Below are positions 93 to 26,710 of a DNA stretch of 39,653 nt, piece after piece; position 1 is the first letter of the stretch; each line of letters starts with the position of its first letter. The DNA is from Octopus bimaculoides (taxonomy: Eukaryota), in the NCBI RefSeq assembly GCF_001194135.2, contig NC_069005.1:18079588-18119240 (forward strand). Reading direction: 5' to 3'. A model generated the notes under the pieces. The model ran no database searches. It worked only from the letters and a program-made list of their open reading frames with translations, and was not told the origin of the DNA. Position numbers and translations under genes: made by a program.

Positions 93-93
<1 letters not shown>

Positions 94-125: not shown

Positions 126-128
<3 letters not shown>

Positions 129-144
129 GTAAATGTTTTCCCAA

Positions 145-480: not shown

Positions 481-490
481 CAAACACCAG

Positions 491-4135: not shown

Positions 4136-4154
4136 TTTCTAGCTCTGTCTTCAA

Positions 4155-4511
4155 GGAAGCTTTACTTCTTGGACTCACGTTTTTGTGCGCAACAATGTTG
4201 TTAAACTTCCGTTAACAGCACTGTATGCAAGTCCTTTCCATTTTCTTTCACACATGGATAAATTTTTCATTATAGACCTTAATGGTCATAAAGACACTAT
4301 ATCAGTGAATAGACTAAAAAAAACCTTCATAGAGAAGACTGTCCCTGTTCCCACTGCAGATGACACACACACAGCATTACAAACACGGCCCACACACCCA
4401 CCTTCACATTCCATGACTACCATTGGGATCAATCAAGTACCAGACAAGGATTCTGGATTATTTTTCCATGTTTTTTACTTAATTTTTGAGAATGGTCAGG
4501 TTCATTTTTAG
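4155..4511 (+). pseudogene. Gypsy/Ty3 LTR retrotransposon integrase C-terminal (GPY/F-like) fragment
   Basis: THVFVRNNVVKLPLTALYASPFHFLSHMDKFFIIDLNGHKDTISVNRLK resembles the THVFVR..L.PPY.GPF.V....TVSIDRLKP consensus. Confidence 0.75.
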
Positions 4512-4639
4512 CATTCTCATTTGTGAGTTTATTTCAGATATTCTTGTTTTAAAAATCATCTCTGGCTAATCATTGAGAGGACATTGGTGTTTCCTTGGCA
4601 GAGGTTTGTGCTCTCTGAGTGCTCTTGTTGTTATTATTG

Positions 4640-5200
4640 TCAAACTGGCAGGACCTTTACCATGTTAGACATCATTTCTTCTAGTTTTTTACATTCTGAA
4701 TTCAAATTCGATCAAAGTTGATTTTGCTTTTCATCCTTTCAGGGTTGATAACAAAGTACCAGCCAAGTACTGGGTTTGATGAAATCAACTAACCCACTCT
4801 CCAGAAGTTATTAGCCTGGTACCAAAATTAGAAACAACAATATAGCAGAATTGCTAGAGCATTAGAAAAATATTTTTGGCATTAGATCCGACCCACTACA
4901 TTCTAAATTCAAATCACATTACAGTCAACTTTGCCTTTCATCGTTTTGGGGTACTTATTTTAATAAATACCGATCAAATACTCGGGGTCAATCTAATTGA
5001 TCAATTCTCTTCCCCTCAAAATTACTAACTGTGCTAAAATTAGTGCTTATGGCAGAAAGATGGCAGAATTGTTAGAGTGCCAGACAAAATGGCTTTTGAA
5101 GTTCTGAGCTCAAACCATGCCATGGCCAATTTGCTTTTCATAATTTTTAAGGTCTATTAAATAAAGTACCAGTCAAATACTTGCCTTTCACTCTCAAAAC
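4640..5200 (+). mobile_element. Cluster of about three degenerate SINE fragments of one family
   Basis: Repeated ..aattcaaat...gtc.actttgcctttcatc...ggg...ataaa.tacc motif at about 4700, 4905 and 5125; same family inverted at 10235-10450. Confidence 0.6.
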
Positions 5201-5489
5201 TGCTGCCAATATTATTATTGTTGCTGTTATTATTTGTCATTTTATGTCTTAGTCAGAAGAGGAAATGCAGTGTCCATAACATTTTTGCAGGATTTACAAG
5301 AATGTTTCCAATAAGGGGAAAATCTTGATATTAACAAATCAAAGATCTGATCTCTATGCTAACATCAGATTGAGCTCTACTAAAGGCATATCCAAGAGAC
5401 AGGTGAATTGAATTAAGTGATGGATTAAGTTCATCACCCCAATAACAGGTAGTCCATCTGGTGAACTTTGGCATAGTCTTTGCCTACAC

Positions 5490-5814
5490 CAGAGGTTCTC
5501 AACCATTTTTTATCTATGGACCCCTTTGTTTATCATTTTATTCTGGTGGATCTCCATAGCCATTTGATGTTTAAAAGTTAATTTTATAGATACTTCTTTC
5601 AAAATTTGTATTTTGCTATTCACACACTCAGTTGTACAAGTTGAACTATGTAAAATGTTAGTCATTTCTTGCAATACATACATATAAATCAAAACTTTTC
5701 ATGGACCCTTAAAATACTACTGTGGATCGCCAATTTACTATTTTGCTAGTGTGAACCCCACAAAATTTTAAATGGACCCCCTAGGGTCATATGAACCTCT
5801 ATTAAGAACCACTG
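5490..5814. mobile_element. hAT (Charlie-like) MITE, 325 bp
   Basis: Termini CAGAGGTTCTCAAC / ATTAAGAACCACTG; degenerate 8-bp TSD gcctacac / gtcaacac. Confidence 0.75.
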
Positions 5815-7167
5815 GTCAACACAATTTCATTCACAAGGGCCTAGGAAGACCTAATAAAAATACACTGTAATAGATGATACTTGTCCAAGGTACCACACAA
5901 TGAGACTAAACTCAGATTCATGAGTTTGTGAAGCAAATTATTTAACCACAAACCTACACCTATGTGTAGATTCAGGTCATTTCTAACAAAAGAGACCCAT
6001 AGAACAAGTACAATCCACAGATTCAATATTTCAAATATATTCAGCATGCAACTATTCAAGACCATACACAGTGCACTGTAATACTTTAATTGAGTTGTGT
6101 AGCCCTTGGTTAGTCAACTCAGCTCAAGTAAAAAAAGTGGTGGTTAGTTGCAGAGAGCACAAGCATAGTCATGATTACAAACTGAAGCATCACAGTGGGC
6201 AGAATCTGGAGTGGAAGTGTGCAACAATGTTAAGTAGACCTAAAGTAAAAACATCAAGCAGACCAAGAACACACAGGTCAAGAAGAAATAGAATACACCA
6301 CACAAATTTTACAAACAAATGAAGCACACACAGAGGTAGTTAGCTAAGTGAATTAATGTAACACACATTGTCATATCTACACCTCTTTGATGAAGGAGGT
6401 GATGATAATGAGGAGGATGATCTCTTGTCTTGTGTCATGTATGTAAAAAAATTATTTTTGTAAAAATCAATTAACTTAACCTCAGTTTATTACTAGTACC
6501 ACTCTCTCCACCAACCTGATCAAAACATTTGATGTGAAATATATAAATTACTACTGCTGATGATAGTGATGATAACAGTGGAGATGATGGTGATGACACT
6601 GATAATGATAACAAAGACAAGAATCTATATATTAATACACTAAGGCCAAATACATTATGTAGCCATATAGTTAGTTGAAGGGAGAGGTGAAGAGCAAGAG
6701 TAAAAGAGGAAGAGAGTTAATGGAAGCGAAAAATGAATAGAAAGAGAGAGAGAGAGAAATGATAACAATGTGAAGAGGAGAATTACATGTTTGTTGAAGT
6801 TAGAGGTAAAGAAAAAAAAGAGAGTGAAATATGAAGTGTTCAGCAGGGGGAAATTTTAAACATCATATATCATTGTGACTGACAAAAGAATAACATTTTA
6901 ACATTCAATTTTTGATATTTTCTATCTGTCAATCTATTTAGCTATCTATCTATATTGACAATTACATCAGTGGGTGGACAATGGAAAGAAAGCATATATT
7001 AGATATAATAATAAAACGATGAAAGTAAACAAAGTTTGTTTTAGAAGCACTGAGATGTATTGAAAGATACAGAAATAATTTTTTTTTTTATTCTCAAATG
7101 CGTGATAATGCTAATAAATAACGTGATCAGGATAAATTATCCATACATTGCAGAAAAATACGTTACC

Positions 7168-7240
7168 GGCCAGTCATGAAACTCGAACTCACATCCCTGT
7201 GATTATGTGTCGAGTGCTTTACCATTAAGCTAAACTACCC
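7168..7240 (-). pseudogene. tRNA-like sequence (copy 1; loop CACATAA)
   Basis: Box A TAGCTTAATGG, box B GTTCGAG, D-stem GCTT/AAGC; anticodon stem broken; T5 terminator about 10 nt downstream. Confidence 0.7.
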
Positions 7241-7514
7241 AGTAACGAATTCTTCAGCAATTTTAGAACTTATAAATTTAGTTTCATAAGACGCTCACGT
7301 AAAATTCAACTTATGATGAAAGTAGACAAACACAATATTTATTAGCATTATCATGCGTTTGAGAATAAAAAATAATAATTTCTGTATCTTTCAATACATC
7401 TCAATGCTTCTAAAATAAACTTTGTTTGTTTACTTTCATCGTAAGTTGAATTTAACGTTAGCGTTGTATGAAGCTAAATTTATAAGTTCTAAAATTGCAG
7501 AAGAATTAGTTACT

Positions 7515-7587
7515 GGGCAGTTTAGCTTAATGGTAAAGCACTTGACGCGTAATCACAGGGATGTAAGTTCGAGTCTCATGGCTGGCC
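7515..7587 (+). pseudogene. tRNA-like sequence (copy 2; loop CGCGTAA)
   Basis: Box A TAGCTTAATGG, box B GTTCGAGTC, D-stem intact, acceptor stem partial, anticodon stem broken; TTTTT at 7597-7601. Confidence 0.7.
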
Positions 7588-7899
7588 TGTAACGTATTTT
7601 TCTGCAATGTATGGATAATTTATCCTGATCACGCTATTTATTAGCATTATCACGTGTTTGAGAATTAAAAAAAAAAAATTTCTGTAATAATAAACTTATA
7701 AATAGAAAATAGATTTTTCAATGAAAGCAAAATAACTTAGCAAAATAGTCTTGGTTGGCAAACAACTTTGACTGAGCTTTGTTACTAAAAACTGTGGTGG
7801 TGGTGGTGGTGGTGGTGGAGATGAGTGAATAGTGAAAAAGAAGTAGTAAGTGCAATTATTTATCGTCTGCTCACTTGAAAATTGATATTTGTTTTTAAA

Positions 7900-8270
7900 A
7901 TATGAATGATAATGTAAGCTAAACAAAAGAAAGAATGAGAGGGCATAGGCAACAATGTAAAGAGAAGCAGAGAAGTGAATCACTAGAAGAAGCATGAGGA
8001 CTGCAGCGTAAAAGGGAAAATATGAACAAAGAGAATATAGTGAGCATTTACAACAGACAAGAGAATGTCTGATAAAATAGAAAATGAAAATGAGAATGTC
8101 AAAAAATTTGTAAACATATGATTGAAAGTTACATCATTGGTGACATGAATATCCTCTGTAATCATTGTGAAACTCTTAGATTTATAAATGAACCTTTCAA
8201 CTCTTGAGAGAATGAGAAAGTCATGCTCCATCAATTACAACCTTATCCAGAACTGAAAGGTTTTTTAAAA
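7900..8270 (+). pseudogene. Helitron Rep/helicase N-terminal Zn-finger-like remnant
   Basis: YIIGDMNILCNHCETLRFINEPFNS*ENEKVMLHQLQPYPEL resembles G.M...C.HC.A.RF..E...CC..GKV.L..L.P; a charged helical tract lies upstream. Confidence 0.6.
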
Positions 8271-8542
8271 TTAAATTAATGCAGAATATACAATTTCAAA
8301 AGAAACACTAATTTTTATGGTTCTATATAAACTTCCAACTATCTAAATAAATTCCACAGATACTGCTAGTAATAATGATAATTATGAAAATAACAATAAA
8401 GATGAAGATGATGATGATAATGTTAACATGGATTATGACAATGAAAACAATAATGCTGAAACTTAGAGTTAAAGACAAAGAAAGGGTGTTGTAACATTCA
8501 TACTTTCCTCAAAGTCACCCTTTATTGAGGTATACTACTTAC

Positions 8543-8584
8543 TCCTTTAATTACATGAAGAGGCCATGTTTTGAGAGGAACATC
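8543..8584 (-). CDS. POLRMT: POLRMT small exon, 42 nt, phase 0/0: DVPLKTWPLHVIKG
   Basis: Acceptor ttgttcttgcag|, donor GGA|gtaagt; supplies the conserved WP..V between GPS and VG(R/K)(F/I)L. Confidence 0.85.
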
Positions 8585-10073
8585 CTGCAAGAACAAATTA
8601 ATAAATGAAAAAAATGATAAGTTATAAATAAGAGAAGATGAAAATAAAAATAGAAAACATAAATAAGTATTAATTTGATAGAGAAAATGACATGTCCACA
8701 TTGTGAACCCGTTGTAACTTGTAACTGTTGTATCCTTTACATGTTGGTAAATTAATAGACCCACTTTGGTAATCGCAGCATCACTATTAGCTCTGCCAGA
8801 CACAACTCTCAACACAGTCTAACACATACTGTCTGTACCATTATTATTAATTCCCTACATCTCCCTTTTTAAGTTTTTCTTAAGAAGTGACATTTTATTT
8901 AGCAATATTTTTTTTTATTCACCCCACCTCCCTTTTCTGAGGTTTTTTTTTTTGTACAATTTAATATTTTTGCTCTTGGCATCTATTTTCAGGAACTCTG
9001 TGTTTTCATTTCCTCTCACTTGTACATCTGGGTTCAATCACCTGCAGTGCCTCATCAATGTTTTTGGTAAAAAAAGATAAAGTTTGCTCAATGTATATCC
9101 CCATTATGCAAATTACCTACAACACTACTGGAGTAATGGAATACAAAGTGACAGAGTGCAAAGTAGCAGGATTGAGTAAATAGAAAATTGAAAGGTTGGT
9201 CTGAATAGTGGAGGTCATGCTCTCTCTTACATATGCTCATACACACTCAATTGTTTACATATAAACACAAGAGAGAAGAGAGGATGGAAAGAGATAACTC
9301 TGAAGCAATGTGGATGCAATGGCAAGGGTAACAACAGCAACAATACCAATCACAACAATAACAACAATGACAATAATAATAAGAATTTCAAGTAAAGTAC
9401 TTACAGCCACTGTCATACATCAGAGGTAAAGGGTGTTATTGCTCATTTCCTGTGACAAGTTTATAATGAAGGCTTCAAATAACCAACTCTTAAGCAGACA
9501 GACAAACCAGGTGTGTGTAAAAATTTCCATAGTCTGTAGTGAGCAACTCACAGTGTACCTGCTCCCCTCACAACTTTTCATTTGTATATGCCCACCATCA
9601 ATTGCATAGTTACCTATTCACACCCGTGCATACAATGCTAGTCCTAAACATCAATACACTCATACTCAAATTCCCTCCTTACTATTATACCATATGGTAA
9701 CTAAACTTCTTAAGTTGCTACTACTACTCTTCTATTCTGCCCATGCACATACCCACAGTAGCAAAGAAGCATATAAGTTTGAATTCACATAAACAATGGT
9801 AGAATATTCAAGTATTTTATGTAAGTTCAGTGGATCCAGTAAGTTAATTGGCCTACTGAATCTGAAGTTGTAGGAGATGCAAAATGCATTCTGCAGAAGG
9901 GTGGATATTACATATGTCTGTTATCTCAAAGTTAGAAAGTTTGATTTAAAAGAGATTTGGTTGCTACTTCTCGGAGGTCAATTGACCTCACTGACTTGAG
10001 GAACACATTTTACAATGCTATGTAAAACATAACGGAGGAAATTATGTAAAAGTATCAAAGCAAGACAATTTAC

Positions 10074-10190
10074 CAAAGATGGCCCATCACAGTGTTTCTT
10101 CATCAGGTTCAACCAAATAAGTCGATGATTGACCAATTCTGGTTGTTTTTCATTGTATTTTTCAATATACTCATTGTATAAGTGGACAGT
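10074..10190 (-). CDS. POLRMT: POLRMT exon, 117 nt, phase 0/0: TVHLYNEYIEKYNEKQPELVNHRLIWLNLMKKHCDGPSL
   Basis: Acceptor ttttttatttttactgcag|, donor TTG|gtaaat; N.R..W..L.....GPS motif. Confidence 0.9.
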
Positions 10191-10234
10191 CTGCAGTAAA
10201 AATAAAAAAAGAAATATATAAGTGTGACATACAT

Positions 10235-10450
10235 TGGTTTCAAATTTTGGCACAAAGCCAGCAAGCTCAGGGGAGGAGGTAAGTCAATTACATTGACCCA
10301 GCTTTCAACTGGTACTTATTTTATTGAGCCTAGAAGAATGAAATGCTAAGTCAACTTTGGCAGAATTTGAATGCAGAATGTAAAGAGAAACAAAATGCCA
10401 CTAAGCATTTCACCCAGCATACTAACAATTCTGTCAGCTTTCCACCTAAA
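10235..10450 (-). mobile_element. SINE (same family as the 4640-5200 cluster)
   Basis: Reverse complement contains ttctgccaaagttgacttagcatttcattc...aataaaataagtaccagttgaaagctgggtcaatgtaattgac...gtgccaaaatttgaaacc. Confidence 0.65.
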
Positions 10451-10496
10451 TGTGACATGTATTGCTTTGGCTAAACATTAACATATCTTTAGTTAT

Positions 10497-10885
10497 ATCA
10501 TCATCATTTAACATCCACTTTTCCATTCTTGCAGGACAGAGACAAGATTTGTTGATGTAGATTTTCTACAACTAGATGTCCTCCCTGTCCACATTCCTCA
10601 CCTGTTTCCAAGCAAGGTAATATTTCCATGACCAGACATGTTTTTTATGAAAGCCTAGAAGCAAACAACATCACTTGTATGACAATGATGCTCATTTACA
10701 ACCACTATCTGGACAAAAGTTTCACACAAGCATGCATACATATATATACATGTGACAGGCTTCTTTCAGTTTCCATCTACCAAATCCACTCACAAGATTT
10801 TGGTCAGCCAAGGTGTTGTGCAGTGGGACAAATCTCAAGACGATATAATTGAGAATCAAGCTTCTTAATCACACAACCACACCTG
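10497..10885 (-). mobile_element. Near full-length tRNA-head/CORE SINE with RTE-type (GAT)n tail
   Basis: Head caggtgtggttgtgtgattaagaagctt, central ggatttggtagatggaaactgaaagaagcc, tail gtggatgttaaatgatgatgat. Confidence 0.75.
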
Positions 10886-10912
10886 TTATAATTTGTTGAA
10901 CAGAAAAAAGGT

Positions 10913-10975
10913 AAAGAAGACATGGGCACAGGAGTAGTGAGGGATGATCTCAGGATGCTGAGCCCTACAGAGGGA
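10913..10975 (+). mobile_element. Short RTE ORF 3'-end fragment
   Basis: aagaagacatggg..gagtagtgagggatgatctcaggatgctgagccctacagagg aligns with 30763-30820 of the RTE copy. Confidence 0.55.
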
Positions 10976-11113
10976 GTGCTGAAGCAGCTTCATGCAGCAT
11001 GGAAAATTTGAATGTATCACTAATACTGGAGATGGAACAGAAAAAAAAAAAAGAAAAGAAAAAAGCATAAAAAGTAAGAAAATGAAAAATATGTGGAAAT
11101 AAATAGGTTTTAC

Positions 11114-11245
11114 CTTTTTGGAAACTAAAGAGTTGATTTTATCTTCAATAAGAAAGCGATAGTAAACTTTGTTGCCCATACGTAACCAGAGGAAATTGAG
11201 GCTAGGGCTGAATGCTTCTGAATCACTAGCCAAACGCTGAGCTTC
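11114..11245 (-). CDS. POLRMT: POLRMT exon, 132 nt, phase 0/0: EAQRLASDSEAFSPSLNFLWLRMGNKVYYRFLIEDKINSLVSKK
   Basis: Acceptor tttatttctgcag|, donor AAG|gtaaaa; only frame 0 is open; resembles the invertebrate POLRMT E.R.LA.GSE.FSP....L...LG.KV motif. Confidence 0.9.
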
Positions 11246-11321
11246 CTGCAGAAATAAACATCACATTATATGGAAATATATATATATATACTATGGTTAT
11301 GACTTTTTCACAACCTAATAA

Positions 11322-14300
11322 CCCTATACTGTAATTCAATGAATAATTTCATAAAAGTCAGGAAACTAACATTTATTTTGCTTCATTTGAAAAAATGTTA
11401 CCCCCAACTTAAGAAATCGATCACCACTTCTGGTCCAAATCATGCAAAATTCTAGCAGGGTTCATGACATCTGCTCAAGTGTTTACCAAACTTGGTGTGC
11501 TGACTCAATGCAATGCAGAAATAGTATATCTGAAATTTCACCTTTCTAGTTGAAGTAGTTTCGGAGTTATGGACTTTTAAAAGTGTAACAAACTCATAAG
11601 AGGCGGAGAGAGAACGTAAGTTCGTTTGCCCGAACATGAGAAATTATTGATTTCTCATTGGTTAAAAATTACTGCCCATATACGAATTCTGAACTTCGTT
11701 GAAGAAGTTTTTCATGGGGTACGGTTCTAGGAAGTAGTTATAAAAACCCTAATTTTTGGCAAACTCTCCAGTGATCGTTGGGTTGCTACTAAAATCCACG
11801 GCACTCACCCTCTTGAGTATCGCCTAATATTTATGCCGTGTTCAATACTCAAATCCGACAATATTTAATTGTTGTGAACCCTTATAGCTAGAATGAAAGA
11901 TTAGTTAGTATAAATCTAAGTCGTAATTCTCTACGACGAAATGACTTTATTTCTAAATGTACTATAAATGCCAAAAATGTACATAATAAATTAATGTAGA
12001 AATTTAATTCCTTTTACTTCTCATTTTTTTCAACTTGTTGAATTTATTTCTGTATATTAATGAAACTGTATTTTTTTTAAGTGTAACAGTCAAAAAAATA
12101 TAATCTGTATCTTCAACATACATGTACGTATGAACGCACATTCAGCGTCTTGGTATGTATACATCATAACATTTACGCAGCCTAAACTAAGAGTTATGCT
12201 TAGTGATAAATACTTATAATTAAGTTATAAGTAACGAGATTATCATTATAGCTTTTAATTAAGAAACTATAATATTTGTTATAACTTACGATCGGAAACA
12301 TTGTAAGTAGAGATATAGTATATATCTCACTATCCGACCTATTACCACAAAAGTATAATCATTAGATGGCACTAGATTCACACTTCAGTATTTTCACTAC
12401 CTAAATCTTTGTAAAAGCAAGAGAGATGTGAAATAAAAGTGTATTTATACATTTTTAAAATTACTAAATTGAAATTGCACTATGCAAAGGTTCAAAACAG
12501 CTATTTTAAGACAGAGGCCACTACAAGCATTCGATACCATACAAAATTAAAAACAATACATATTTTTTTACTTTATAGGATTAATTCCAGTTTTAAATAT
12601 ATAGGAAAAAGGGTGCTGGATGTTAGTAAATTTTAAACATAACAAAGAATTAATATGATTTGTTAGATAAAATAAATCGAAGCTGAAGTTTCTCCTTTTT
12701 ACAAACATCATAAAGATCTTGAAGGCACCTGATTGCTCATTCTGCACTCTAATTTCTTCTGGGAATTTTGATGGTTCTCAACTTCAAAAGTTTTTTACAG
12801 AGTTCAATGCTTTTCTATGAACTTGCAGACTCTCACATAACTTCTGATAATCATGTGCATTAAACATTTGGTCAGTAAACCAAAAATTTGCCTAGCTGTA
12901 AATGATGAATCAACAAACATTGAGAAGCAAAACTCTTTTCTCTGGTAAAAGAATAAATGCCAAAAAAGCTAGTATTGCTCGAGAATTCTCTCTTGTATTA
13001 CTTAAGTTGGGTATTTTTTGAAACTTTACAGTAGGAAATTTTCCAATTTCTTCAAAGAAACGTAAAACACTGGTCAAATGAAATAGAAATTTTATGTCAT
13101 CTCACCATCCTGCTGATTCAGTAAAATTTTTTTCACCATTGTTGAAATTAGCCAGGAGTTTCTTGTAATTACTTAGAAGCTCTGGGATGAATGCATATTC
13201 AATATTGGGAGATGACTTTTTTCTCGAAGTTTGTTATCCATTACAACATGAAGAACTCTATCAAGGATATAATACTGACAACCAATAAATTGCAGTTCTT
13301 TCAAACCTTATTGAGCAAAGTCTTTGCAACTGAATGACAATGCCATTTCTTTTCCCAATATTCACACTCATTGTATCAGCAACAATCATCTTTACACAGT
13401 TCCATAAATTGAATTCATCTAAATCAGCTGTTATTCCTTTCACAATAGTATCGGTTTTTCCCTTTGGTAATTGGAGTGCTTCTGACTTAACTTCTCTCTG
13501 TTCATTCTTTAAAACTAGCACTTGGTATACTTGATAATTAATATGTTTACCATCAACATGCAATGACCAGTTTTCTAAATGTACTGTTTTCTCCATTTTC
13601 CTTTTCAGTTTAACAGTTTCTTTGATAGTCGATCTGAAAATACCAGATTGGGAAGAAGTCTCGACATTGATTCCATCTTGAGATAATTGTTGACAAACTG
13701 TTGTTGCTTTTAGGGTTGATAGCTTGGAAGATATTACTAACTTGGTTGCAGTTCCAGTTTTGCTATACTTCCTCCTTGTTTGCACGGATTCTTCATCTGA
13801 TTTTTCAGACTCTTGATATTCACTTTCAGTCTCTGCCTCAAATGTTGACAATGACACTGGAGTTGCTCTGGTTAAAGTTGGCATTAAGGATACTTTTCTG
13901 CTTTTGGATGGGTGGATAGTTTTGGAATTGGCTGCCTTACCAGTTGCATACCCAACCTGTCCCTTGCTTTCAATTTGAAGATAATATAACCTTCTATCGT
14001 CACTGCACAGCCATTTCTTTTGTGATGTCAAAAATTCTTTTCAATAAATTGTATTTTCCTTTTTACATATTTATTGTAGGTATTCAGCACTTTTTCTACT
14101 TTGCTTGTACATTTTGAATTGATAAATATGGGAAACTTAATTTCTTTTGCCATAAAAAAGTTACTTATTTCAAAATTTCCTTTATTATTTCTTTCACTCT
14201 TTTGATGGTACCTCCAAGGAACAGATAGCAATCAACAATTTGAAGTTTCATTGGTATCCTGCAGTTGCTTTCCTAAGAATGCTCTTCCAGAGGAACAGGT

Positions 14301-14786
14301 GTTCTTTTCCTATGTGAGTCTTGAAATTGCACAAGATTCTTCGTCCAGATTTTTTTGTTTCTTTGAGTGACACAAGCACTCCTCTTATGAGACATTATTT
14401 TAGATACTCCAGTTGGATAAGCCTATTATTCTGAAAAACAGTTAATGTAGTCAGAGCTTTTAGCGTCACAGAAATAAAAAGGAGAGGAAGAGGATATCTC
14501 CTAAAGCAGGGCCTAAGTGGTAACAAATTAAAAACTCTATAACTCCTAAAGTACTGAAACTTGAAATTTGAGATAGACTGCTTCTGCATTGCATTAAGTC
14601 AGCACACCAAGTTTGGTAAAAACTTGAGTAAGCATTATGAACCTCCACAGCCCTAGAATTTGGCATGATTTGGGTCAAAAGTGATGTTAGATTCCTTCAG
14701 TTAGGGGTGACGTTTTTCTAAAAAAACTTAAAATAAAAATTATTTTCCCTCCTTATATGAAATTGTTCATCGACTTTCAATACAGG
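11322..14786 (-). mobile_element. hAT-like DNA transposon, about 3.5 kb, with long (~260 bp) imperfect terminal inverted repeats
   Basis: 11322-11580 is inverse-homologous to about 14520-14786 (for example accaaacttggtgtgctgact.aatgcaatgcagaa); internal transposase remnant; exact termini and TSD not resolved. Confidence 0.8.
12650..14400 (-). pseudogene. Disrupted DDE transposase (hAT-like)
   Basis: WSLHVDGK (D1), KMIVADTMSVNIGKRNG (D2), QFIGCQYYILD (decayed CxxH), SNTRENSRAIL (decayed RWNS); frameshifts and stops. Confidence 0.75.
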
Positions 14787-15781
14787 AATTTGCTTACTTC
14801 CAAGGCAGNNNNNNNNNNNNNNNNNNNNNNNNNNNNNNNNNNNNNNNNNNNNNNNNNNNNNNNNNNNNNNNNNNNNNNNNNNNNNNNNNNNNNNNNNNNN
14901 NNNNNNNNNNNNNNNNNNNNNNNNNNNNNNNNNNNNNNNNNNNNNNNNNNNNNNNNNNNNNNNNNNNNNNNNNNNNNNNNNNNNNNNNNNNNNNNNNNNN
15001 NNNNNNNNNNNNNNNNNNNNNNNNNNNNNNNNNNNNNNNNNNNNNNNNNNNNNNNNNNNNNNNNNNNNNNNNNNNNNNNNNNNNNNNNNNNNNNNNNNNN
15101 NNNNNNNNNNNNNNNNNNNNNNNNNNNNNNNNNNNNNNNNNNNNNNNNNNNNNNNNNNNNNNNNNNNNNNNNNNNNNNNNNNNNNNNNNNNNNNNNNNNN
15201 NNNNNNNNNNNNNNNNNNNNNNNNNNNNNNNNNNNNNNNNNNNNNNNNNNNNNNNNNNNNNNNNNNNNNNNNNNNNNNNNNNNNNNNNNNNNNNNNNNNN
15301 NNNNNNNNNNNNNNNNNNNNNNNNNNNNNNNNNNNNNNNNNNNNNNNNNNNNNNNNNNNNNNNNNNNNNNNNNNNNNNNNNNNNNNNNNNNNNNNNNNNN
15401 NNNNNNNNNNNNNNNNNNNNNNNNNNNNNNNNNNNNNNNNNNNNNNNNNNNNNNNNNNNNNNNNNNNNNNNNNNNNNNNNNNNNNNNNNNNNNNNNNNNN
15501 NNNNNNNNNNNNNNNNNNNNNNNNNNNNNNNNNNNNNNNNNNNNNNNNNNNNNNNNNNNNNNNNNNNNNNNNNNNNNNNNNNNNNNNNNNNNNNNNNNNN
15601 NNNNNNNNNNNNNNNNNNNNNNNNNNNNNNNNNNNNNNNNNNNNNNNNNNNNNNNNNNNNNNNNNNNNNNNNNNNNNNNNNNNNNNNNNNNNNNNNNNNN
15701 NNNNNNNNNNNNNNNNNNNNNNNNNNNNNNNNNNNNNNNNNNNNNNNNNNNNNNNNNNNNNNNNNNNNNNNNNNNNNNNNN

Positions 15782-16143
15782 AACATTGCTTGTTTTCACT
15801 TTTTCGATATCAGTGAATAACTTCACTGGAAAAAAACTTATATTTTGCCAAGGGATTGTCCTTCTCATCGAAGGTCGGCGATTATCGTACGCTGAAGAAG
15901 GGAAATAACCCTGAAACTCGGGTCCGTACGTATCGCAGACCAAGATGGGAGGGATAACTTCCCTTGGCAAAAATAGACAGGACACAGATGTGTGTCGATA
16001 AGCCAGCTGGAGGAGATGTTCTCCTGGGGCTAAAAGCAACAGTAACATCCACCCTTAGGGGTCAGCCACATTTAAATGGCAAATATACTTCACTTTATCA
16101 TGCAGTTACTGTTAATACCTCGTTCAGAGATTTAACATTGCTT
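15782..16143 (+). mobile_element. ~350-bp structured non-coding unit carrying the hammerhead (retrozyme or PLE pseudo-LTR candidate)
   Basis: Rod 15841-15975 encloses the ribozyme; further hairpins at 15811-15828, 15981-15996, 16001-16031 and 16038-16113; aacattgctt repeats at 352-bp spacing; ends in (TA)n. Confidence 0.55.
15878..15936 (+). ncRNA. Type I hammerhead ribozyme (minimal stem III), predicted cleavage after C15924 (GUC)
   Basis: Stem I CGTACG(15886-91)/CGTACG(15925-30) plus GCGAT/ATCGC; core CTGAAGA (15892-98); stem II AGGG-aaataa-CCCT; GAAA (15913-16); stem III AC-tcgg-GT; C17. Confidence 0.9.
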
Positions 16144-16699
16144 ATATATATATAGTTTTAGGGAAAAGAACCATGCACATTTATGAATTTGTTTTGCAAG
16201 ATTCCTGATGTGAAATGAACTAGGCAGAGTAGGAGGGTACACATAGATGGAAAGGATCACTAAAGAGGTCACAGATGTGTGACAGAAGATTTCCAGACAA
16301 TGAACATAAGATAAAATAATAATAATAATAAATGAGTGGAGAATGAATATATAGTGTGTATTTATTTGACAAAAAAAATTTTTTTAATGACTATCTTAAA
16401 ATATAACAATATATATAATTCTGTGTACATGTATGGGTGTCTGCAGTTAGGTTAGCTGAGTTAGAGGTTAAAATAATCATCTAAGGGATAGAAGTATCCA
16501 TTATACTACTGGTATATTACCGATGTTTAACCATGGGCATACATATTCAAGCATATTATGCTTATAAATTATAGGTAAAGACAAGGATAAACGTGAGTTT
16601 ATGAAGAATCAAATGTTGGAGGGCTGAAGGGGTTAGGGAGAGTCTAGGAGTATATGCATTTGAAGATGGGAGATAAGTGATGCATATATGGGGAGAGAA

Positions 16700-16830
16700 G
16701 GTGAATATACGAGGAGGTACCCAAAAGTAACCAGAAACATTCTCTGTGGTCGATTTGTTCGACCAACGGCAATGCTCCAACATGGCCGCAGTCACATGAC
16801 TGAAACAAATAAAACAAGTAAAAAAACTAT
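16700..16830 (+). mobile_element. SINE 3' fragment
   Basis: ggtcgatttgttcgac...gctccaacatggccgcagtcacatgactgaaacaa matches the SINE tail at 32190-32255. Confidence 0.75.
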
Positions 16831-16834
16831 GCCA

Positions 16835-17740
16835 TCTTAATCCCGAGATGGTTAGTGAGAGCTGTGCGAGCCATGTACAGAGACGCTGTTAGTAAGGTGA
16901 GTACAGTGAAGAACTCTGGGTAGAGGTAGGGGTCCACCAAGATTCTGTCCTCAGCCCCCTCCTATTTATCATAGTCCTCCAGGCTATAACAGAGGAATTC
17001 AAGACAGGATGCCCCTGGGAGCTCCTCTATGCTGATGACCTTGCACTAATTGCTGAGTCACTATCAGAACTAGAAGAGAAGTTTAAGGTGTGGAAGCAAG
17101 GACTAGAATCGAAGGGCCTTAGAATCAACCTAGCTAAAACCAAAGTCCTAATAAGTAGGAAGGTAGAAAAATCACAAACACCTTCAGGTAGATGGCCCTG
17201 CTCGATCTGTAGAAAAGGTGTAGGTAGAAACTCTATAAGATGCAACCAATGCAAGCTATGGACACATAAGAGGTGCAGCAATATCAAACGAAGGTTAACT
17301 AGGAAGTTAGTTTTTGTATGCAGCAGATGTGCTGGAGCTATAAACACTGTAAATGTGGAGAAAACAACTTTTGCCACATTCCAGGGAGAAAAACTAGAAG
17401 TGGTTGATAGCTTCTGATACCTAGGTGACCAAGTTAGTAGTGGGGGAGGGTGCGCTGAAAATGTAGCTGCTAGAATAAGAATAGCCTGGGCAAAGTTCAG
17501 AGAGCTCTTACCTCTGCTGGTGACAAAGGGCCTCTCGCTCAGAGTGAAAGGCAGACTGTATGATGTATGTGTACGGACAGCCATACTTCATGGCAGTGAA
17601 ACATGGGCCATGACTGCTGAAGACATGCGTAGGCTCGCAAGGAATGAAACCAGTATGCTCCGATGGATGTGTAATGTCAGTGTGCATACTAGACAGAGTG
17701 TAAGTACCTTGAGAGAAAAGTTGAACCTAAGAAGCATCAT
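16835..17740 (+). mobile_element. RTE LINE fragment: RT core (YADD), PHD-like finger and C-terminal domain; truncated at both ends
   Basis: VGVHQDSVLSPLLFIIVLQ...WELLYADDL (YADD at 17028-17039); C4HC3 at 17199-17330; KGRLYDVCVRTAILHGSETW. Confidence 0.92.
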
Positions 17741-17949
17741 TAATCACATTATTTTATACTACCCTCATGCATATATATGTGTGTGTGTATACTTGTGTAT
17801 GTGTGTGTGTATATATATATACGAATGAAAGCATTAATATGCAATGCCAATACACAACCAATTGATTGATTAATTATTAAATTGAGTAACTGATTAATCG
17901 ATTGATTGATTAGCTAATTGGCTGATTAGTTTTACTATCTTCTTCTTAT

Positions 17950-20380
17950 TATTATTTGTTAGGTAGTATGATTTCTTGTTTGTATTTGTCAGCTTCCTTA
18001 AATACTGAAAACAGTTTTTTGTTTTGCTCGTGTTTTGTGGCTATTTGTATTAGCTTTCCTTGCTTCTGAAGTAGGTATTTTTGCAGTCCTATGGTGGTTA
18101 TTTTATAATAGTTTTCCAGCTGTATGAGGCCTCTACCACCTTCTATACGTTGTATATATAGCCTTTCTATGTCAGATTTTGGGTGGTGCGTCCTAGATCC
18201 TGTCATTATTTTTACTTGTTTTCCTGTCTATTTCGGTTAGTTCATTTAGTGTCCAGTTAAGGATATTGTAGCTGTAACTTATTACTGGGACGGCTAAAAT
18301 GTTAATACCTATTATCTTGTTTTTAGCATTGAGCTCTGTTTTCAGTATTGATCTAACTTGTCTATAGTATTCTTTCTTTATTATCTCTTTCATTTGTGTG
18401 TGCTGTATCCTATCTAGTTCATTGATTCCTAAATATTTGTATGTCTGGTTTTATCTAGTGTGATGTTGCTACTCTTAACTAGTTTTCCTATTTTCAGGGT
18501 TGCTTTGGCACATTTTTCTAATCCAAATTTCATATCTATCTCTTTGGTAAATCCATATACTCTCTGTAGTAGTGTTTCCAGCTGTTTATCATTCGTAGCG
18601 TATAGTTTTAGGTCATCCATATAGAAGAGGCGGCTGATTGTTTTGCCGTAACATTTGTATCCACATCCAGTTCTGTTTAGCATGTCAGATAAAGGTGTCA
18701 GTACCAAGCAGAACAGGAGTGGAGAGAGCGTATCTCCCTGGAATATTCCTCTTCTAGTGGGGATGGCTTTGGTTTTCACAAGTCCCTCTTTTGTTTGGAG
18801 CTGTAGCACTGTCTACCATTTATTCATAGAGTATCTTTTGTATTTTATAATTATTGGTGCTACCCTCTTTATGGCTAGTGTTTCGAGGATCCACGTGTGG
18901 GGAACACTGTCAAAAGCCTTTCGGTAGTCGATCCAGGCCATACTGAAGCCTTTCTTCTTTCTGCGGCTGTCTTCAGTTATGGCTTTATTGATCATTAATT
19001 GATCTTTACAGCCGTATGAGCCCTTGCAGCATCACTTCTGCTCTTCTGGAAACAGGTGGTTATCTTCCAGGTGCTTATTCAATCTCTGTGATATTATTGC
19101 AGTAAAGGCTTTGTAGATTATAGGGAGACAGGTTATAGGTCTGTAGTTTTGTGGTTTTGCCATTTCCGTGGATTTGGGAATTAGGATAATTTTCCCTTTC
19201 GTGAACCATTCAGGCATTGTCTCTGGCTCTGCTAGTATGTCGTTAAAGTTTTGAGCCAGCTTTTTGTGTATTCCTGTCAGATATTTTAACCAGAAGTTGG
19301 GGATCTTGTCGTGCCCAGGTGCCTTCCAGTTGCTTAGTCTTTGCAGTGCCTGGGTGACCTCTTCAGTTGTTATAGGGGTCCAGAGTTGCTCAGGTGCTAA
19401 GTTTGTTGTTTTAATAGTCCTTTTCTGAGGTTGTTGCTTCACCGACCATATTTCTTTCCAAAATTCTTCCACTTCTTCTGCTGTTGGTGCTGCAGTAATG
19501 TCTATTTTATTTTTGTCAAGTTCTTGGTAGAATTTTTGGGGGTTGGAGTTGAACTGTTTGTTTTGTTCAAATAAACTTTGGCGTTTCTCATACCGGCAGA
19601 TCCTTTGTGCTTTGGCAAGGATATCTTGCTTTAGCTTTTCTTTTACTTCAGGTAAATCTTTTTCTGTAATGTTGTATTTGCACAGTATTTTTGTTTTATT
19701 CTTGCTACTTAGTAGTGTTGATTGTCTACTAACTTCATTAAGAATCTACAGATCTTTTCTCTTTTTTTAAATTTTTTTTTTGGATATTATTTATCCGCAG
19801 GGTTTGTTTGGGTGGTGGAACTCCTGTTTGGATGGGTTTGAGGGAGTATCCTGCTTCTTTTGTGGCCACAGTTGCTGCTGCATACATTATGTCATTTAGC
19901 TTGGTGATATTACCATTTGTTTCTGTGGTTATTAGTTCTGTGACGGCCAGGTTTATACTATTTATTATTGATGTTGTTTTATTGTCTATTTTGATTTTTG
20001 GGAGATATAATCTGTGGTCTATTCTGAGATCTGTGGTTTTTAGTTCTTTGATTATTCTCATTTTTATAGTATCATAATCATTAGGTTCCCCTTCACTGTT
20101 TCCAGGTTTTAGATTTGTTTCGCCTTCCTTCTCATTCATATGTTTGTCTGTGGTGTTCTGGATTGGTGCTTTTTCTGCATTATTATACATCCCTACGGTC
20201 TGGGTTTGTTGTTTTTTGTTTACTTCGTTTTTGTTGGGAATGTTACGTTTGTCTTTGTGTTTTACTATCTCAGTGTTTATATTATTATTTGGCATTGTTG
20301 TGTGGCTACTATCTACATTTTCCTGATGTATTTTTCCTTTTAATTGTTCTATTTCTATTTCTGATATTTTTTTTTTTGCT
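17950..20380 (-). mobile_element. R4/Dong-clade non-LTR retrotransposon, 3'-truncated and disrupted
   Basis: NWKAPGHDKIPNFWLK, NYRPITCLP, SMAWIDYRKAFDSVPH, RGIFQGDTLSPLLFCL, LFYMDDLKLY, HHPKSDIERLY..R.EGGRGL; no RLE domain retained. Confidence 0.88.
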
Positions 20381-21857: not shown

Positions 21858-22618
21858 AAAGAAAACTGAAACGTAGAAGGCAGACATTCTCCAAAAACAA
21901 GAATAAAACGACGATGAGAATTTGCAAATAAGGCCGTAAGTCATTTTAATCTTGACACTGCATGCAAATTACAGTATTTGTATAGAAAGAGATAAAGGCA
22001 GTTTCTGTGAGTTTGTATTCATATGCATAAGAGGTGGTTATGTTTGACCGTTACATCACTTGGAATTGCAGCAGGAAGAGAACACGTCTAATCACTTTGG
22101 TTGCGCTGTCCAAAAGCTATAGATTTAACTATCCCACAATGCAACACCATGGCGTGCACTATCCAGCAGCCAATGGATGAGACAACTGGTTTCAAGGGAG
22201 GTAACTGTTTACATGGCTTCCCTGCAAGACTCAAAGTCGGAAATAATGAACAGTGGACAGAAAGTTAAGGGAATACAAACACTCAGAGATTGCAGAGAGG
22301 CAACAGTGGGAGAAATGTGTACAAAGTGAAAAAGAAAAAAAACATGTGTCTATGAGGTGTCCCAAATATTTCAAGCTGGAAGATCCAAACTCTCACTTGG
22401 ACGGATTGATTTTCACACCAAAAGAACACAAACATTTGAACAACTGTGTTAAATGCTGGATATGTCTAATCACTTTGATTGCGCCGTCCAAAAGCTATAG
22501 ATTTAACTATCCCACAATGCAACACCACAACATGCACCATCCAGTGGCCAATGGATGAGACAACTGGTTTCAAAGGAGGTAACTGTCTATAGAGGCTATC
22601 CAGCGCTGCCATATTTCA
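21858..22618. mobile_element. Unclassified ~760-bp insertion containing a 123-bp direct repeat (22086-22208 / 22464-22586)
   Basis: Splits the LINE APE sequence between FNA and (V)GA..; the repeat copies are about 90% identical at 378-bp spacing. Confidence 0.55.
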
Positions 22619-24859: not shown

Positions 24860-26065
24860 TTGTCAGATGAGATGTTGAATGCCTTTAGGTATAGAGGTAA
24901 TACATGATGTATCCAAATTGTGTTGTGAAGAGGAGAAGGTTGGTTCCAAGTTGTGGAAGAGGCAAGGTGTCATCATGTATAATAAGAGTGCAAACTTAGG
25001 ATCTTGTATATCTAGATACTTGTAAAGGAATATATAATGTTGGTATAGAAGAGTGGTAAAGCAATGGGTAGACATAAGAACATTCCTGGGGTAGCTGAGA
25101 GCAAATTGGATAGCTAACCAGTTGATAGCTTGAAGAATTTTTGAAGAGGCTTCCTATGGAGGGGACATGATTTGGAGTTTAACAGTTTGAGTGGTAACAT
25201 TAGGATGTTAAATTTTTCTGCTAAGCAGAATTGGCACTTACTACCGATCGAACATGCTGGGGTCAATTCTATAATACTTAATTTAATGCTATAGGAAGCA
25301 CCTTCGCTTCTTAAATTTGAAATATATTGTGAGAAGGTTGTTGATTTTTTGTCTTCATGTCTGAAGGTGTGTGTATGTTGGGTGTACCTTGATTTGAAAT
25401 GCCTACATAGCATTTTGAATGCCTGTATAGCATTTTGAATGCCTATATAGCATTTTGTATCACTACTGATATTATCAATAGTAGTTAACACTTCAGCACA
25501 AAAAATCAATTTTTTTTTAAGGCATGCACCTTTATTAAGACAGTTGCACTGAGATGAGGGTCCATTAGTAGGAAATGGATTTAGTTTTTTCTCTATTAAG
25601 TGTAGCTGTAACTAACTTTTAGATCGAATCTATTAAAAAATCTCATGAAACTTGTGGTTGCTAGGAAAATGTTGGCTTACTAGATTCAGGAATGCTCTTC
25701 CAATATTAGATTTTGCTCTTAAGCTGAAAGGTGGGTTGTACCATATAGTTTTCTCTTCCTGGTTCTTATACTATTAGTGCTATTTAGTTGAGGGATGTAA
25801 TTTATTGTTTCATTAAAGCCATTTCTTTTCAGGGCATTGTTGTAAAATTTAGCTGCATGGTCGAAAAATTTTTTATTGGAAGAGATCTTTGATATTCCTT
25901 TTGCTAATGTTTGTAGATAAGTTTTTGATATTAGATGGGTGAATAGAATGCTTACTAATGTATCACCTTGTTGGATTTTTCTGTAGGGGCTGTAGGATCC
26001 TGAATTTAGGTTCATTGTAATATCTAGGAAATTAACTATTCTAATTTTGAGTTTAAAGTTTTTAA
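24860..26065 (-). mobile_element. Penelope/Poseidon-type PLE 3' portion (RT thumb, linker, GIY-YIG)
   Basis: VNFLDITMNLNSGSYSPYRK, SNIGRAFLNLVSQHFPSNHKFHEIF, CNCLNKGAC, KCYIG..FKSRYTQHTHTFRH..CQFCLAEKFNIL; 20-bp x2.8 minisatellite at 25401-25456. Confidence 0.85.
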
Positions 26066-26710
26066 ATATATCAACCAGGTGTCGACCAGTGTGTCCAATG
26101 TATGGGGAGTACATTGAGCACAAAAAAGAGCAGTGGACGCAGTAATTACTGGATGTGCAAATGATGGAGTTGTGGTGTGGAAGGAGCAGTTATGGGTACT
26201 GTTGAAGAGGGTGGTTTGAGAGGAAGAGACAGGTGGAAGAGTATGTTCAAGAGCAGTGGAAGTAGCCGGGTTGAGTGCCAGCAGAGGAGAAAGAATAGGG
26301 TGGAAGGTTGGTGAGTTGAAGGGGAGGCAGGTAAGGGTTGGACAACTATGAGGGAAAAGGGCTGATGTCAACAGAATGAGCATGGATGAGGGCAGCTTGG
26401 ATAACAGTAGTGGGATATCCTCATTGAGTGAAATGGCAAGCCACGAGTTGGAACTGTCTCAAAATTATGAACGTCAGTACAGAACTGATAGAGAAGGAAG
26501 AACTAGAAATAGGGGATGGATAGTTTAGAGTGGGAAGGAGAAATTAGGGTAGGAGCAGGAGTTTGTAGGCTTCTAGTGGATAAAGGTGGTGTGAGAGGAA
26601 TGGATGATAGCAACAGAAATGTCAAGAAAATTAACGGTGGTGTTGAAGACAAAGTAAAATTCAAGTGAGGAAGGAGTTTTTACAGGAAAGTGTGGTTGCA
26701 TCGATACAAT
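26066..26710 (-). mobile_element. Second PLE family fragment (RT C-terminal part to GIY-YIG; Neptune-like, related to 38905-39653)
   Basis: INFLDISV..KPTNSCSY (RT), then CTSSNYCVHCSFLCSMYSPYIGHTGRHLVD (GIY-YIG). Confidence 0.75.

What the first reader, a model, noticed from the sequence alone, without database searches (positions are those of the whole stretch)
15782..16143. Intact hammerhead ribozyme capping a 135-nt rod in a ~350-bp ORF-less unit: candidate cephalopod retrozyme / viroid-like circRNA
Seen: every catalytic-core nucleotide of a type I hammerhead is present (CUGAAGA, GAAA, GUC at 15922-24). Stem I extends by GCGAT/ATCGC and GGTC/GACC into a further long helix, 15841-15869 with 15944-15975. 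Three differences between those arms are G-U compatible, which hints at selection on RNA structure. Stem III is only 2 bp, but ACUCGGGU is self-complementary (6 Watson-Crick plus 2 G-U pairs as a dimer). The rest of the unit is also hairpin-rich (cagtgaa/ttcactg, gacaca/tgtgtc, aggaga/tctcct, aacagtaac/gttactgtt, accc/gggt). The 10-mer aacattgctt recurs 352 bp apart, and the unit abuts a 973-N gap and ends in (TA)n. Established: minimal type I hammerheads with palindromic stem III work as dimers in Penelope pseudo-LTRs and in tandem metazoan non-LTR retrozymes of a few hundred nt, which yield circular RNAs. Inference: this is the last monomer of a tandem array collapsed in the gap, producing self-cleaved ~350-nt linear or circular RNA mobilised in trans by the PLEs abundant here. 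It is antisense to POLRMT, so it would not cut the host pre-mRNA. Caveat: the same 10-mer also occurs in the SINE at about 32084, so the period evidence alone is weak.
Basis: partly seen in the sequence, partly recalled or inferred. Interest (0 to 1): 0.85.

Follow-up and report, generated by a model that had tools for sequence, protein, structure and literature searches.

The report
Hammerhead ribozyme in octopus repeat
A real, sequence-intact type I hammerhead self-cleaving ribozyme caps a long RNA hairpin in a roughly 350-bp non-coding repeat, an ordinary ribozyme-carrying animal retroelement ("retrozyme"/Penelope-derived); only one copy is visible, so tandem repeats and circular RNA remain unshown.

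Summary
At 15886-15930 (+) there is a 45-nt type I hammerhead. It has the canonical metazoan geometry: helix I 6 bp, helix II 4 bp, helix III 2 bp plus a tetraloop, with cleavage predicted after C15924. It sits at the tip of a 135-141-nt rod. It is the only such motif in the window. None met the strict descriptor in 1500 dinucleotide shuffles. A covariance model I built from independent canonical hammerheads ranks it first (27.4 bits, E about 2e-6).

Rfam's own Hammerhead_1 model does not report it, although it scores control hammerheads at 26-47 bits. The motif has A10.1-U11.1 instead of the usual G-C, and an unusual helix II and loop 2.

Folding predicts an inactive monomer, because CUGA pairs with the helix III loop. 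It predicts an active "double hammerhead" with an 8-bp helix III when two copies meet.

This is the canonical hammerhead typical of non-LTR retrozymes, not the minimal hammerhead of Penelope pseudo-LTRs. But no second copy, tandem period, circular RNA or Penelope linkage could be shown. One related copy was traced, in Octopus bimaculoides. No POLRMT exon was found on either strand.

Verdict: a new member of a known kind, of modest interest.

The parts
14809..15781 (.). Assembly gap of 973 N directly upstream of the unit. It hides whatever precedes the unit: more units, a PLE body or unique flank.
15782..15791 (+). AACATTGCTT, the first 10 bases after the gap and identical to the last 10 bases of the unit. 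It could be the end of a preceding tandem unit, a target-site duplication, or chance.
   Evidence: also at 32084; many other 10-mer chance matches are listed
15792..16143 (+). Putative 352-bp non-coding unit (GC 42.6%). The + strand RNA is highly structured.
15838..15978 (+). Rod: a long imperfect hairpin that is the extension of hammerhead helix I. It has 4 G-U pairs and no A-C apposition. The + strand folds at -71.4 and the - strand at -56.2 kcal/mol.
15878..15936 (+). Distal part of helix I: GCGAU/AUCGC, plus the internal loop 5'-UAU (15883-85) / 3'-U (15931). Canonical type I hammerheads from the metagenome loci L007/L014 have the same arrangement.
15886..15930 (+). 45-nt type I hammerhead ribozyme: helix I 6 bp, CUGAAGA, helix II AGGG/CCCU with loop AAAUAA, GAAA, helix III AC/GU with loop UCGG, C17.
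   Evidence: 27.4 bits, E~1.8e-6; Rfam negative
15924..15925 (+). Predicted self-cleavage site (after C17 = 15924).
   Evidence: Inferred from the motif register; not tested.
15979..16133 (+). Remainder of the unit. Predicted hairpins: GACACA/UGUGUC, AGGAGA/UCUCCU, AACAGUAAC/GUUACUGUU and others.
16134..16143 (+). Second AACATTGCTT, at the right end of the unit.
16144..16154 (.). Short (TA)5.5 run abutting the unit. It is compatible with the (TA)n insertion bias of PLE endonucleases but is common in this AT-rich DNA.
   Evidence: PMC8557442 for the bias

Best explanation
This is one copy of a small non-coding retroelement that carries a canonical-geometry type I hammerhead ribozyme. It is either solitary or the last unit next to an unassembled stretch. 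It belongs to the class called metazoan non-LTR retrozymes, now regarded as non-autonomous derivatives of Penelope-like element termini.

Shown: the motif, its uniqueness in the window, the rod, the strand asymmetry of the fold, and the existence of at least one related copy in Octopus bimaculoides.

Inferred mechanism: in + strand RNA the ribozyme sits at the tip of a roughly 45-bp extended helix I. In a single copy, the core CUGA pairs with the helix III loop UCGG. This locks an inactive hairpin about 6 kcal/mol more stable than the active fold. When two copies meet, in a multimeric transcript or in trans, their ACUCGGGU segments form an 8-bp common helix III (a 'double hammerhead'). Each copy is then cut after C15924, giving 5'-OH and 2',3'-cyclic phosphate ends. 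If units are tandem, this releases a ~352-nt monomer. A tRNA ligase (RtcB) could circularise it, and a Penelope-like reverse transcriptase/endonuclease could copy it back into (TA)n-type targets.

At this locus, with only one ribozyme visible, the expected outcome is at most a single inefficient cut of any + strand read-through transcript.
For: - Motif: it matches the definition of canonical metazoan type I hammerheads in PMC4209133, with helix I 6 bp, helix II 4 bp and helix III 1-2 bp capped by a 2-4 nt loop.
- Chance: 0 strict hits in 1500 shuffles.
- Independent model: a covariance model built from eight metagenomic canonical hammerheads plus the RF00163 consensus puts 15886-15930 first, at 27.4 bits, full length and without indels. 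The next hit scores 14.7 bits.
- Helix I architecture: the UAU/U internal loop followed by a 5-bp distal helix was not part of any descriptor or model. It is the same as in comparators L007/L014/L018.
- Dimer: the bimolecular MFE is the double hammerhead, -56.9 against 2 x -27.4 kcal/mol.
- Monomer: the inactive fold is -27.4 and the active fold -21.1 kcal/mol.
- Rod and strand bias.
- Non-coding: only one related ORF turned up in 5.8 billion protein clusters. It is a 54-aa 'uncharacterized protein' of O. bimaculoides, 73% identical and read on the antisense strand across the ribozyme. The other five frames gave nothing.
- Size and GC fit retrozymes (PMC7229834).
- Monomeric retrozyme copies are common, and retrozymes group with PLE pLTRs (bioRxiv 10.64898/2026.07.22.740005).
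- A comparator hammerhead (L014) also caps a ~65-bp rod as a solitary copy.
Against: - No second unit, partial unit or periodicity is present in the window.
- The 10-mer repeat is weak evidence, since dozens of equal chance matches are listed.
- For a hypothetical tandem dimer, the double-hammerhead fold (-256.7 kcal/mol) is 7.5 kcal/mol less stable than two inactive rods (-264.2).
- Rfam Hammerhead_1 does not report the motif, yet it detects controls.
- The conserved G10.1-C11.1 pair is A-U here, which may lower activity.
- Copy number in the genome could not be measured. Only one relative was found, and its inferred sequence has a weakened helix III.
- No RNA evidence was available.
Confidence: 0.55

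Rival explanations
1. It is a solo pseudo-LTR, meaning the 3' end of a 5'-truncated Penelope-like element. The ribozyme would be the ordinary PLE terminal hammerhead, and any RT/EN remnant would lie in the 973-N gap. No autonomous small RNA or circle would be made.
For: - PLE hammerheads are mostly found as single dispersed motifs from truncated copies (PMC4209133).
- PLE relics exist in the window: RVT_1 at 37429-37857 and a weak GIY-YIG at 39350-39601.
- The unit ends at a (TA)n run, a known PLE target preference (PMC8557442).
- Retrozymes and pLTRs are phylogenetically intermingled (bioRxiv 10.64898/2026.07.22.740005).
- Tangled PLE insertions often break short-read assemblies (PMC8557442).
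Against: - Metazoan PLE hammerheads are 'min-HHRs'. They have helix II of 6-8 bp, a bulged base after A9, a short helix I and little or no helix III (PMC4209133). This one has the canonical 6/4/2 geometry.
- The unit has no similarity to the PLE pieces in the window.
- No RT or EN coding sequence lies in the visible flanks on the + strand.
- The + frame entering from the gap has no homologues.
Confidence: 0.2
2. It is a dispersed, SINE-like or foldback-type non-autonomous element that carries a hammerhead, as Schistosoma Sm-alpha does. It would be inserted singly, with AACATTGCTT as a 10-bp target-site duplication. The ribozyme would trim the element's own transcript rather than make circles.
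For: - The 10-mer flanks a 342-bp body exactly.
- Retrozyme-type insertions have target-site duplications longer than 4 bp (PMC7229834).
- The comparator family from ERZ1740055 has canonical hammerheads at rod tips. They occur as single copies on six different contigs.
Against: - No tRNA-like head or pol III boxes were found.
- A contig starting exactly at the first base of a target-site duplication would be a coincidence.
- The 10-mer is not statistically compelling.
Confidence: 0.15
3. It is a decayed relic: homologous to hammerhead-bearing repeats but catalytically dead and never transcribed, with no present function.
For: - It has A10.1-U11.1 instead of G-C, and loop 2 is AAAUAA instead of the canonical YAAAUA.
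- Rfam model RF00163 gives no hit.
- The inactive fold is favoured.
- The only relative found is about 27% divergent at the protein-translation level and has an indel.
Against: - All single-stranded core positions and all three helices are intact.
- All non-Watson-Crick appositions in the rod are G-U on the ribozyme strand.
- Axolotl retrozyme hammerheads with a U-U at the base of helix II still cleave, especially as dimers (PMC7229834).
Confidence: 0.1

Closest known systems
Metazoan non-LTR retrozymes (coral, mussel, axolotl; Cervera and de la Pena 2020, PMC7229834)
   Same: - A type I hammerhead with 6-bp helix I, 4-bp helix II and a short helix III.
- A non-coding unit of 170-400 nt with GC below 50%.
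- Highly self-paired RNA.
- Mussel retrozyme hammerheads also lack the archetypal loop 1-loop 2 nucleotides.
   Different: - The defining tandem arrangement is not visible here, since there is only one ribozyme in 39.6 kb.
- No expression or circularity data exist.
- The base of helix II is A-U.
Newt satellite 2 and axolotl HHR_Amex1/2 'double hammerheads' (PMC7229834, PMC6155905), and the ASBVd hammerheads
   Same: - Helix III of 1-2 bp with a near-palindromic tetraloop.
- Poor activity is predicted for a monomer and good activity for a dimer, through an extended common helix III.
- HHR_Amex2 also has a non-canonical base of helix II (U-U).
   Different: - Loop 3 is UCGG, so the dimer helix has two G-U pairs instead of being a perfect palindrome.
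- Loop 2 is AAAUAA.
- Copy number is unknown here, against about 10^5 in axolotl.
Penelope-like element pseudo-LTR min-HHRs (Cervera and de la Pena 2014, PMC4209133)
   Same: - A type I topology, thought to act as a dimer, in a retroelement context.
- A (TA)n-type target.
- PLE relics are present in the same window.
   Different: - min-HHRs have a long helix II, a bulged base after A9, a short helix I and no real helix III. This motif has none of these features.
- No adjacent RT/EN ORF or flanking direct repeat is visible.
Rfam RF00163 Hammerhead_1 (Schistosoma Sm-alpha and newt type)
   Same: - An identical 45-nt geometry, column for column (consensus shown).
- The same UAY/U internal loop in helix I.
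   Different: - It scores below the reporting threshold of RF00163.
- The helix II sequence, the 10.1-11.1 pair and loop 2 differ from GUCC-CAAAUA-GGAC.

Membership tests
Hammerhead ribozyme, type I (canonical metazoan form) | Conserved single-stranded core C3 U4 G5 A6 N7 G8 A9 / G12 A13 A14 / A15.1-U16.1 / H17, in type I order | tested here: met
   Sequence 15892-15924. The descriptor hit is unique in the window. There were 0 strict hits in 1500 shuffles.
Hammerhead ribozyme, type I (canonical metazoan form) | Helix I about 6 bp, helix II 4 bp, helix III 1-2 bp capped by a small palindromic loop (PMC4209133) | tested here: met
   The geometry is 6 bp / 4 bp / 2 bp plus the UCGG loop. The loop is only G-U-palindromic.
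Hammerhead ribozyme, type I (canonical metazoan form) | G10.1-C11.1 base pair | tested here: not met
   The pair is A15899-U15912.
Hammerhead ribozyme, type I (canonical metazoan form) | Reaches the Rfam RF00163 gathering score (34 bits) | tested here: not met
   No hammerhead-clan hit at gathering threshold or at E<=10. Control hammerheads score 26-47 bits with the same tool.
Hammerhead ribozyme, type I (canonical metazoan form) | Significant match to a sequence-plus-structure model of independent canonical type I hammerheads | tested here: met
   Model R1 gives 27.4 bits and E~1.8e-6 (rough calibration) over model positions 1-45, and is the top hit of the window. Caveat: the model has 9 sequences, 6 of them from one family.
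Hammerhead ribozyme, type I (canonical metazoan form) | Loop 1 / loop 2 elements for the tertiary contact | tested here: inconclusive
   The internal loop 5'-UAU/3'-U plus a distal helix is as in comparators. Loop 2 is AAAUAA, not YAAAUA.
Hammerhead ribozyme, type I (canonical metazoan form) | Self-cleavage after position 17 | not testable with these tools
   Only thermodynamic prediction is available: active fold -21.1 against inactive -27.4 kcal/mol, and the dimer favours the double hammerhead.
Non-LTR retrozyme | Head-to-tail tandem units, each with a type I hammerhead | tested here: inconclusive
   One unit and one hammerhead are present in the window. The upstream 973-N gap could hide more.
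Non-LTR retrozyme | Unit of about 150-450 bp, GC below 50%, no ORF, no LTR/PBS/PPT | tested here: met
   The unit is 352 bp if the 10-mer marks the period, with GC 42.6%. It has no ORF with homologues apart from one spurious antisense ORF.
Non-LTR retrozyme | Multi-copy family in the genome | tested here: inconclusive
   One relative was found, and only as a predicted protein of O. bimaculoides. Its DNA was not retrievable. No cephalopod DNA collection was available.
Non-LTR retrozyme | Expressed as linear and circular monomer RNAs | not testable with these tools
   No transcriptome data were accessible.
Penelope-like element pseudo-LTR | Direct repeats flanking an RT-GIY-YIG ORF | tested here: not met
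   There is no repeat of the unit. There is no RT/EN on the + strand in the visible flanks. The gap leaves a loophole.
Penelope-like element pseudo-LTR | min-HHR architecture: long helix II, bulge after A9, no helix III | tested here: not met
   Helix II is 4 bp, there is no bulge, and helix III is present.

The most novel reading that the evidence does not exclude
The unit is the edge of a tandem array of a cephalopod retrozyme family. Its hammerhead uses an A10.1-U11.1 core variant that standard Rfam scans miss. In that case octopus genomes would hold an uncounted population of self-cleaving repeats producing ~352-nt rod-like circular RNAs.
Probability: 0.2. Interest if true: 0.45.

Novelty: new member of a known kind. 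Interest (0 to 1): 0.3.

Why it matters
It adds a cephalopod example to the widespread animal hammerhead-bearing retroelements. It also shows that a structurally complete type I hammerhead can escape the Rfam model that genome papers use to count them. The A-U pair at 10.1/11.1 and the built-in inactive pairing (CUGA with loop 3) make it a tidy natural test case for dimer-dependent control of self-cleavage. It does not open a new class of element. Nothing here shows an effect on the host gene or on RNA biology in octopus.

Tried and rejected
1. Rfam at gathering threshold on the whole window, and at E<=10 on 419 nt and on 79 nt, gave no hammerhead. I first suspected the motif. A positive control and my own model show that the site is hammerhead-like, but outside what RF00163 reports.
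2. I searched for more family members:
   - The antisense 89-aa ORF gave one O. bimaculoides hit.
   - A chimeric query of all other frames gave nothing.
   - Exact look-ups found no contig.
   - A family-specific core pattern in metagenome contigs gave 0 hits.
   - No collection of cephalopod DNA was on hand, so copy number and tandem period remain unknown.
3. Sensitive blastn of the unit against the window found no other copy and no link to the PLE or LINE pieces.
4. A Penelope-type min-HHR scan of the window found only the same site.
5. The POLRMT claim found no support:
   - T7-like RNA polymerase motif regexes in six frames gave only one motif-C-like match, HDSF, in a segment with in-frame stops, which I take as chance.
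   - Pfam on minus-strand open segments from 57 to 18227 gave none.
   - PDB phmmer on non-repeat open segments of 40 aa or more gave none, on the minus strand or the plus strand (segments of 42 aa or more).
   - Short or poorly conserved exons could have been missed.
6. ARAGORN found no tRNA-like SINE head.
7. I rejected the chance explanation (shuffles) and a host-domesticated intronic ribozyme (no host gene identified; repeat-like, with a diverged paralogue).

Full report
**What is there.**

The stretch 15782-16143 follows a 973-N assembly gap (14809-15781) and precedes a short (TA)5.5 run. On the + strand, positions 15886-15930 spell a complete type I hammerhead:
- helix I CGUACG/CGUACG (6 bp);
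- CUGAAGA;
- helix II AGGG/CCCU closed by AAAUAA;
- GAAA;
- helix III A-U plus C-G closed by UCGG;
- C17 at 15924.

Helix I continues through an internal loop (5'-UAU, 3'-U) into GCGAU/AUCGC and GGUC/GACC. It then runs into arms 15841-15869 and 15944-15975, so the ribozyme caps a 135-141-nt rod.

The one thing it overlooked is that the pair at the base of helix II (10.1-11.1) is A-U. PMC4209133 describes this pair as a highly conserved G-C.

**Is it more than chance?**

- A structural descriptor (core boxes, helix I >=5 bp, helix II >=3 bp, helix III >=1 bp) finds only this site on either strand of the window.
- In 1500 dinucleotide-preserving shuffles of the window, a relaxed version hit once and the strict version (6 bp / 4 bp) never hit.
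- The 362-nt unit folds 8 standard deviations better than its shuffles.
- The rod's non-Watson-Crick appositions are all G-U on the ribozyme strand, and none is A-C. The + strand rod is therefore 15 kcal/mol more stable than its complement. With four such positions this is suggestive, not proof, of selection on the + strand RNA.

**The Rfam discrepancy.**

Rfam reports no hammerhead family here, at gathering thresholds or at E<=10 on as little as 79 nt. To see whether that meant 'not a hammerhead', I did two things.

First, I fetched canonical type I hammerheads from metagenome contigs with a generic pattern. The same tool scores them at 26-47 bits with RF00163, whose 45-column consensus is shown.

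Second, I built a covariance model from eight of those sequences plus the RF00163 consensus. Searched over the window with filters off, it puts 15886-15930 first, at 27.4 bits and E about 2e-6 (rough calibration). The alignment runs end to end without a gap, and the next hit scores 14.7 bits.

The motif therefore has exactly the RF00163 geometry. It departs from it in the helix II sequence, the 10.1-11.1 pair and loop 2 (AAAUAA instead of YAAAUA).

A feature outside both descriptor and model also agrees with the comparators L007/L014/L018 and L010: the UAU/U (UAY/U) internal loop after six base pairs of helix I, followed by a short distal helix (5 bp in the L007 family).

**How it would work.**

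For the 69-nt ribozyme domain, the minimum-energy fold pairs the core CUGA with the helix III loop UCGG (-27.4 kcal/mol). The catalytically competent three-helix fold is at -21.1. Two copies together prefer the classical double hammerhead, with an 8-bp common helix III formed by ACUCGGGU. That fold is at -56.9 against 2 x -27.4, and the helix III duplex alone is -10.3 kcal/mol.

This is the behaviour described for newt and axolotl type I hammerheads and for ASBVd (PMC6155905, PMC7229834).

For a hypothetical tandem dimer of the 352-nt unit, the double-hammerhead fold is well formed. It is nevertheless 7.5 kcal/mol above two inactive rods. Cleavage would therefore depend on co-transcriptional folding or on tertiary contacts that the energy model ignores.

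The consequences of cleavage are inferred from the retrozyme literature, not from anything in this sequence. They are a ~352-nt RNA with 5'-OH and cyclic phosphate ends, ligation by RtcB, and reverse transcription by a PLE enzyme.

**Which kind of element?**

PMC4209133 and PMC7229834 separate two situations:
- 'min-HHRs' in Penelope pseudo-LTRs, with a long helix II, a bulge after A9, a short helix I and no helix III;
- canonical type I hammerheads in short AT-rich tandem repeats, the non-LTR retrozymes.

The present motif is of the second type. The unit's size (352 bp if the 10-mer marks the period), GC content (42.6%) and lack of coding capacity fit that type too.

A 2026 preprint (10.64898/2026.07.22.740005) places retrozymes as derivatives of PLE pLTRs and reports that monomeric copies are common. 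The boundary between the rival readings is therefore soft.

Against calling this a retrozyme outright, the defining tandem arrangement is not visible:
- There is no second unit, partial unit or related sequence anywhere in the window.
- The 10-mer AACATTGCTT at both ends is no better than many chance 10-mer matches and also occurs at 32084.
- It could equally be a target-site duplication.

The window's PLE relics are 10 kb or more away and unrelated in sequence. They are RVT_1 at 37429-37857, a weak GIY-YIG at 39350-39601, and a GIY-YIG-like peptide near 26.0 kb. The immediate right neighbour is a LINE-type element (PHD finger, RVT_1).

**Relatives elsewhere.**

No cephalopod DNA collection was available. 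Translating the antisense strand across the unit and searching 5.8 billion protein clusters gave one hit. It is a 54-aa 'uncharacterized protein' of Octopus bimaculoides (A0A0L8IHK6), 73% identical and with a two-residue deletion. All other frames gave nothing.

This shows at least one paralogous copy in an octopus genome and supports a cephalopod origin of the window. It says little about copy number.

Back-translation of that protein keeps the CUGAAGA-helix II-GAAA block (peptide FQGYFPSSA). It implies changes on both strands of helix I at 1.4/2.4 that would still pair (A-U to U-G), and a weakened helix III. This is inference from amino acids, not a DNA alignment.

Hammerhead_1 hits have already been counted in a cephalopod (235 in the giant squid, PMC6962438).

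**Side claims.**

I could not find POLRMT on either strand:
- There was no convincing T7-like polymerase motif (only one motif-C-like match, HDSF, in a segment with in-frame stops).
- There was no Pfam domain on minus-strand open segments from 57 to 18227.
- There was no match to any solved structure, human POLRMT included, for non-repeat open segments of 40 aa or more on the minus strand or 42 aa or more on the plus strand.

Short or fast-evolving exons could have escaped, so the claim is unverified rather than disproved.

**Verdict.**

The retrozyme-type reading is the best available. Tandem arrangement, circular RNA and PLE mobilisation remain untested. This is a new member of a well-described kind, with a mildly unusual core.

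Noticed in passing
window 16748-17676 and 29817-30587 (also 32191-32257): Two copies, 80-88% identical, of a LINE-like element. The left copy encodes a PHD-finger ORF (17088-17414, Pfam PHD E=6e-7). On the opposite strand, 18432-19472 carries RVT_1 fragments of another LINE.
   Followed up: partly
window 37131-37860 (+), 39350-39601 (-), about 25722-26123 (-): Penelope-like relics: an RT fragment (RVT_1 E=6e-6, with a YGIPKIHK motif upstream), a weak GIY-YIG match (E=0.006), and a GIY-YIG-like peptide (YSPYIGHTGRHL) with no Pfam hit. None carries a recognisable hammerhead.
   Followed up: partly
window 7079-7345 / 7410-7676: A large inverted repeat, with 267-nt arms, 90% complementary and 64 nt apart. 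It may be a foldback or MITE-like element.
   Followed up: no
window 13264-14031 (-): A 256-aa open reading frame left of the gap, with no Pfam family and no exact record in the protein collection. Its nature is unknown, and it may be transposon-derived.
   Followed up: partly
L014 3380-3537; also L007, L018, L020, L026, L040 (ENA assembly ERZ1740055): A dispersed family in a metagenome assembly. A canonical type I hammerhead (RF00163 26-44 bits) caps a ~65-bp rod (-83.9 kcal/mol for L014), with one copy per contig. The helix I architecture, UAU/U internal loop plus distal helix, matches the octopus motif.
   Followed up: partly
window 22086-22211 and 22464-22589: Two 126-nt direct repeats, 91% identical and 378 bp apart.
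   Followed up: no
window 6551-6581 (+): A second-best hit of my hammerhead model (14.7 bits). It has only CUGAUGA plus a 6-bp helix I, with helices II/III deleted, and is probably chance.
   Followed up: partly
window 15979-15994 and 16266-16281: Two similar palindromic hairpins, GACACAGATGTGTGTC and GTCACAGATGTGTGAC. One lies inside the unit and the other 120 bp beyond its end. The match is 16 nt at 94%, E=0.5, of unclear meaning.
   Followed up: no
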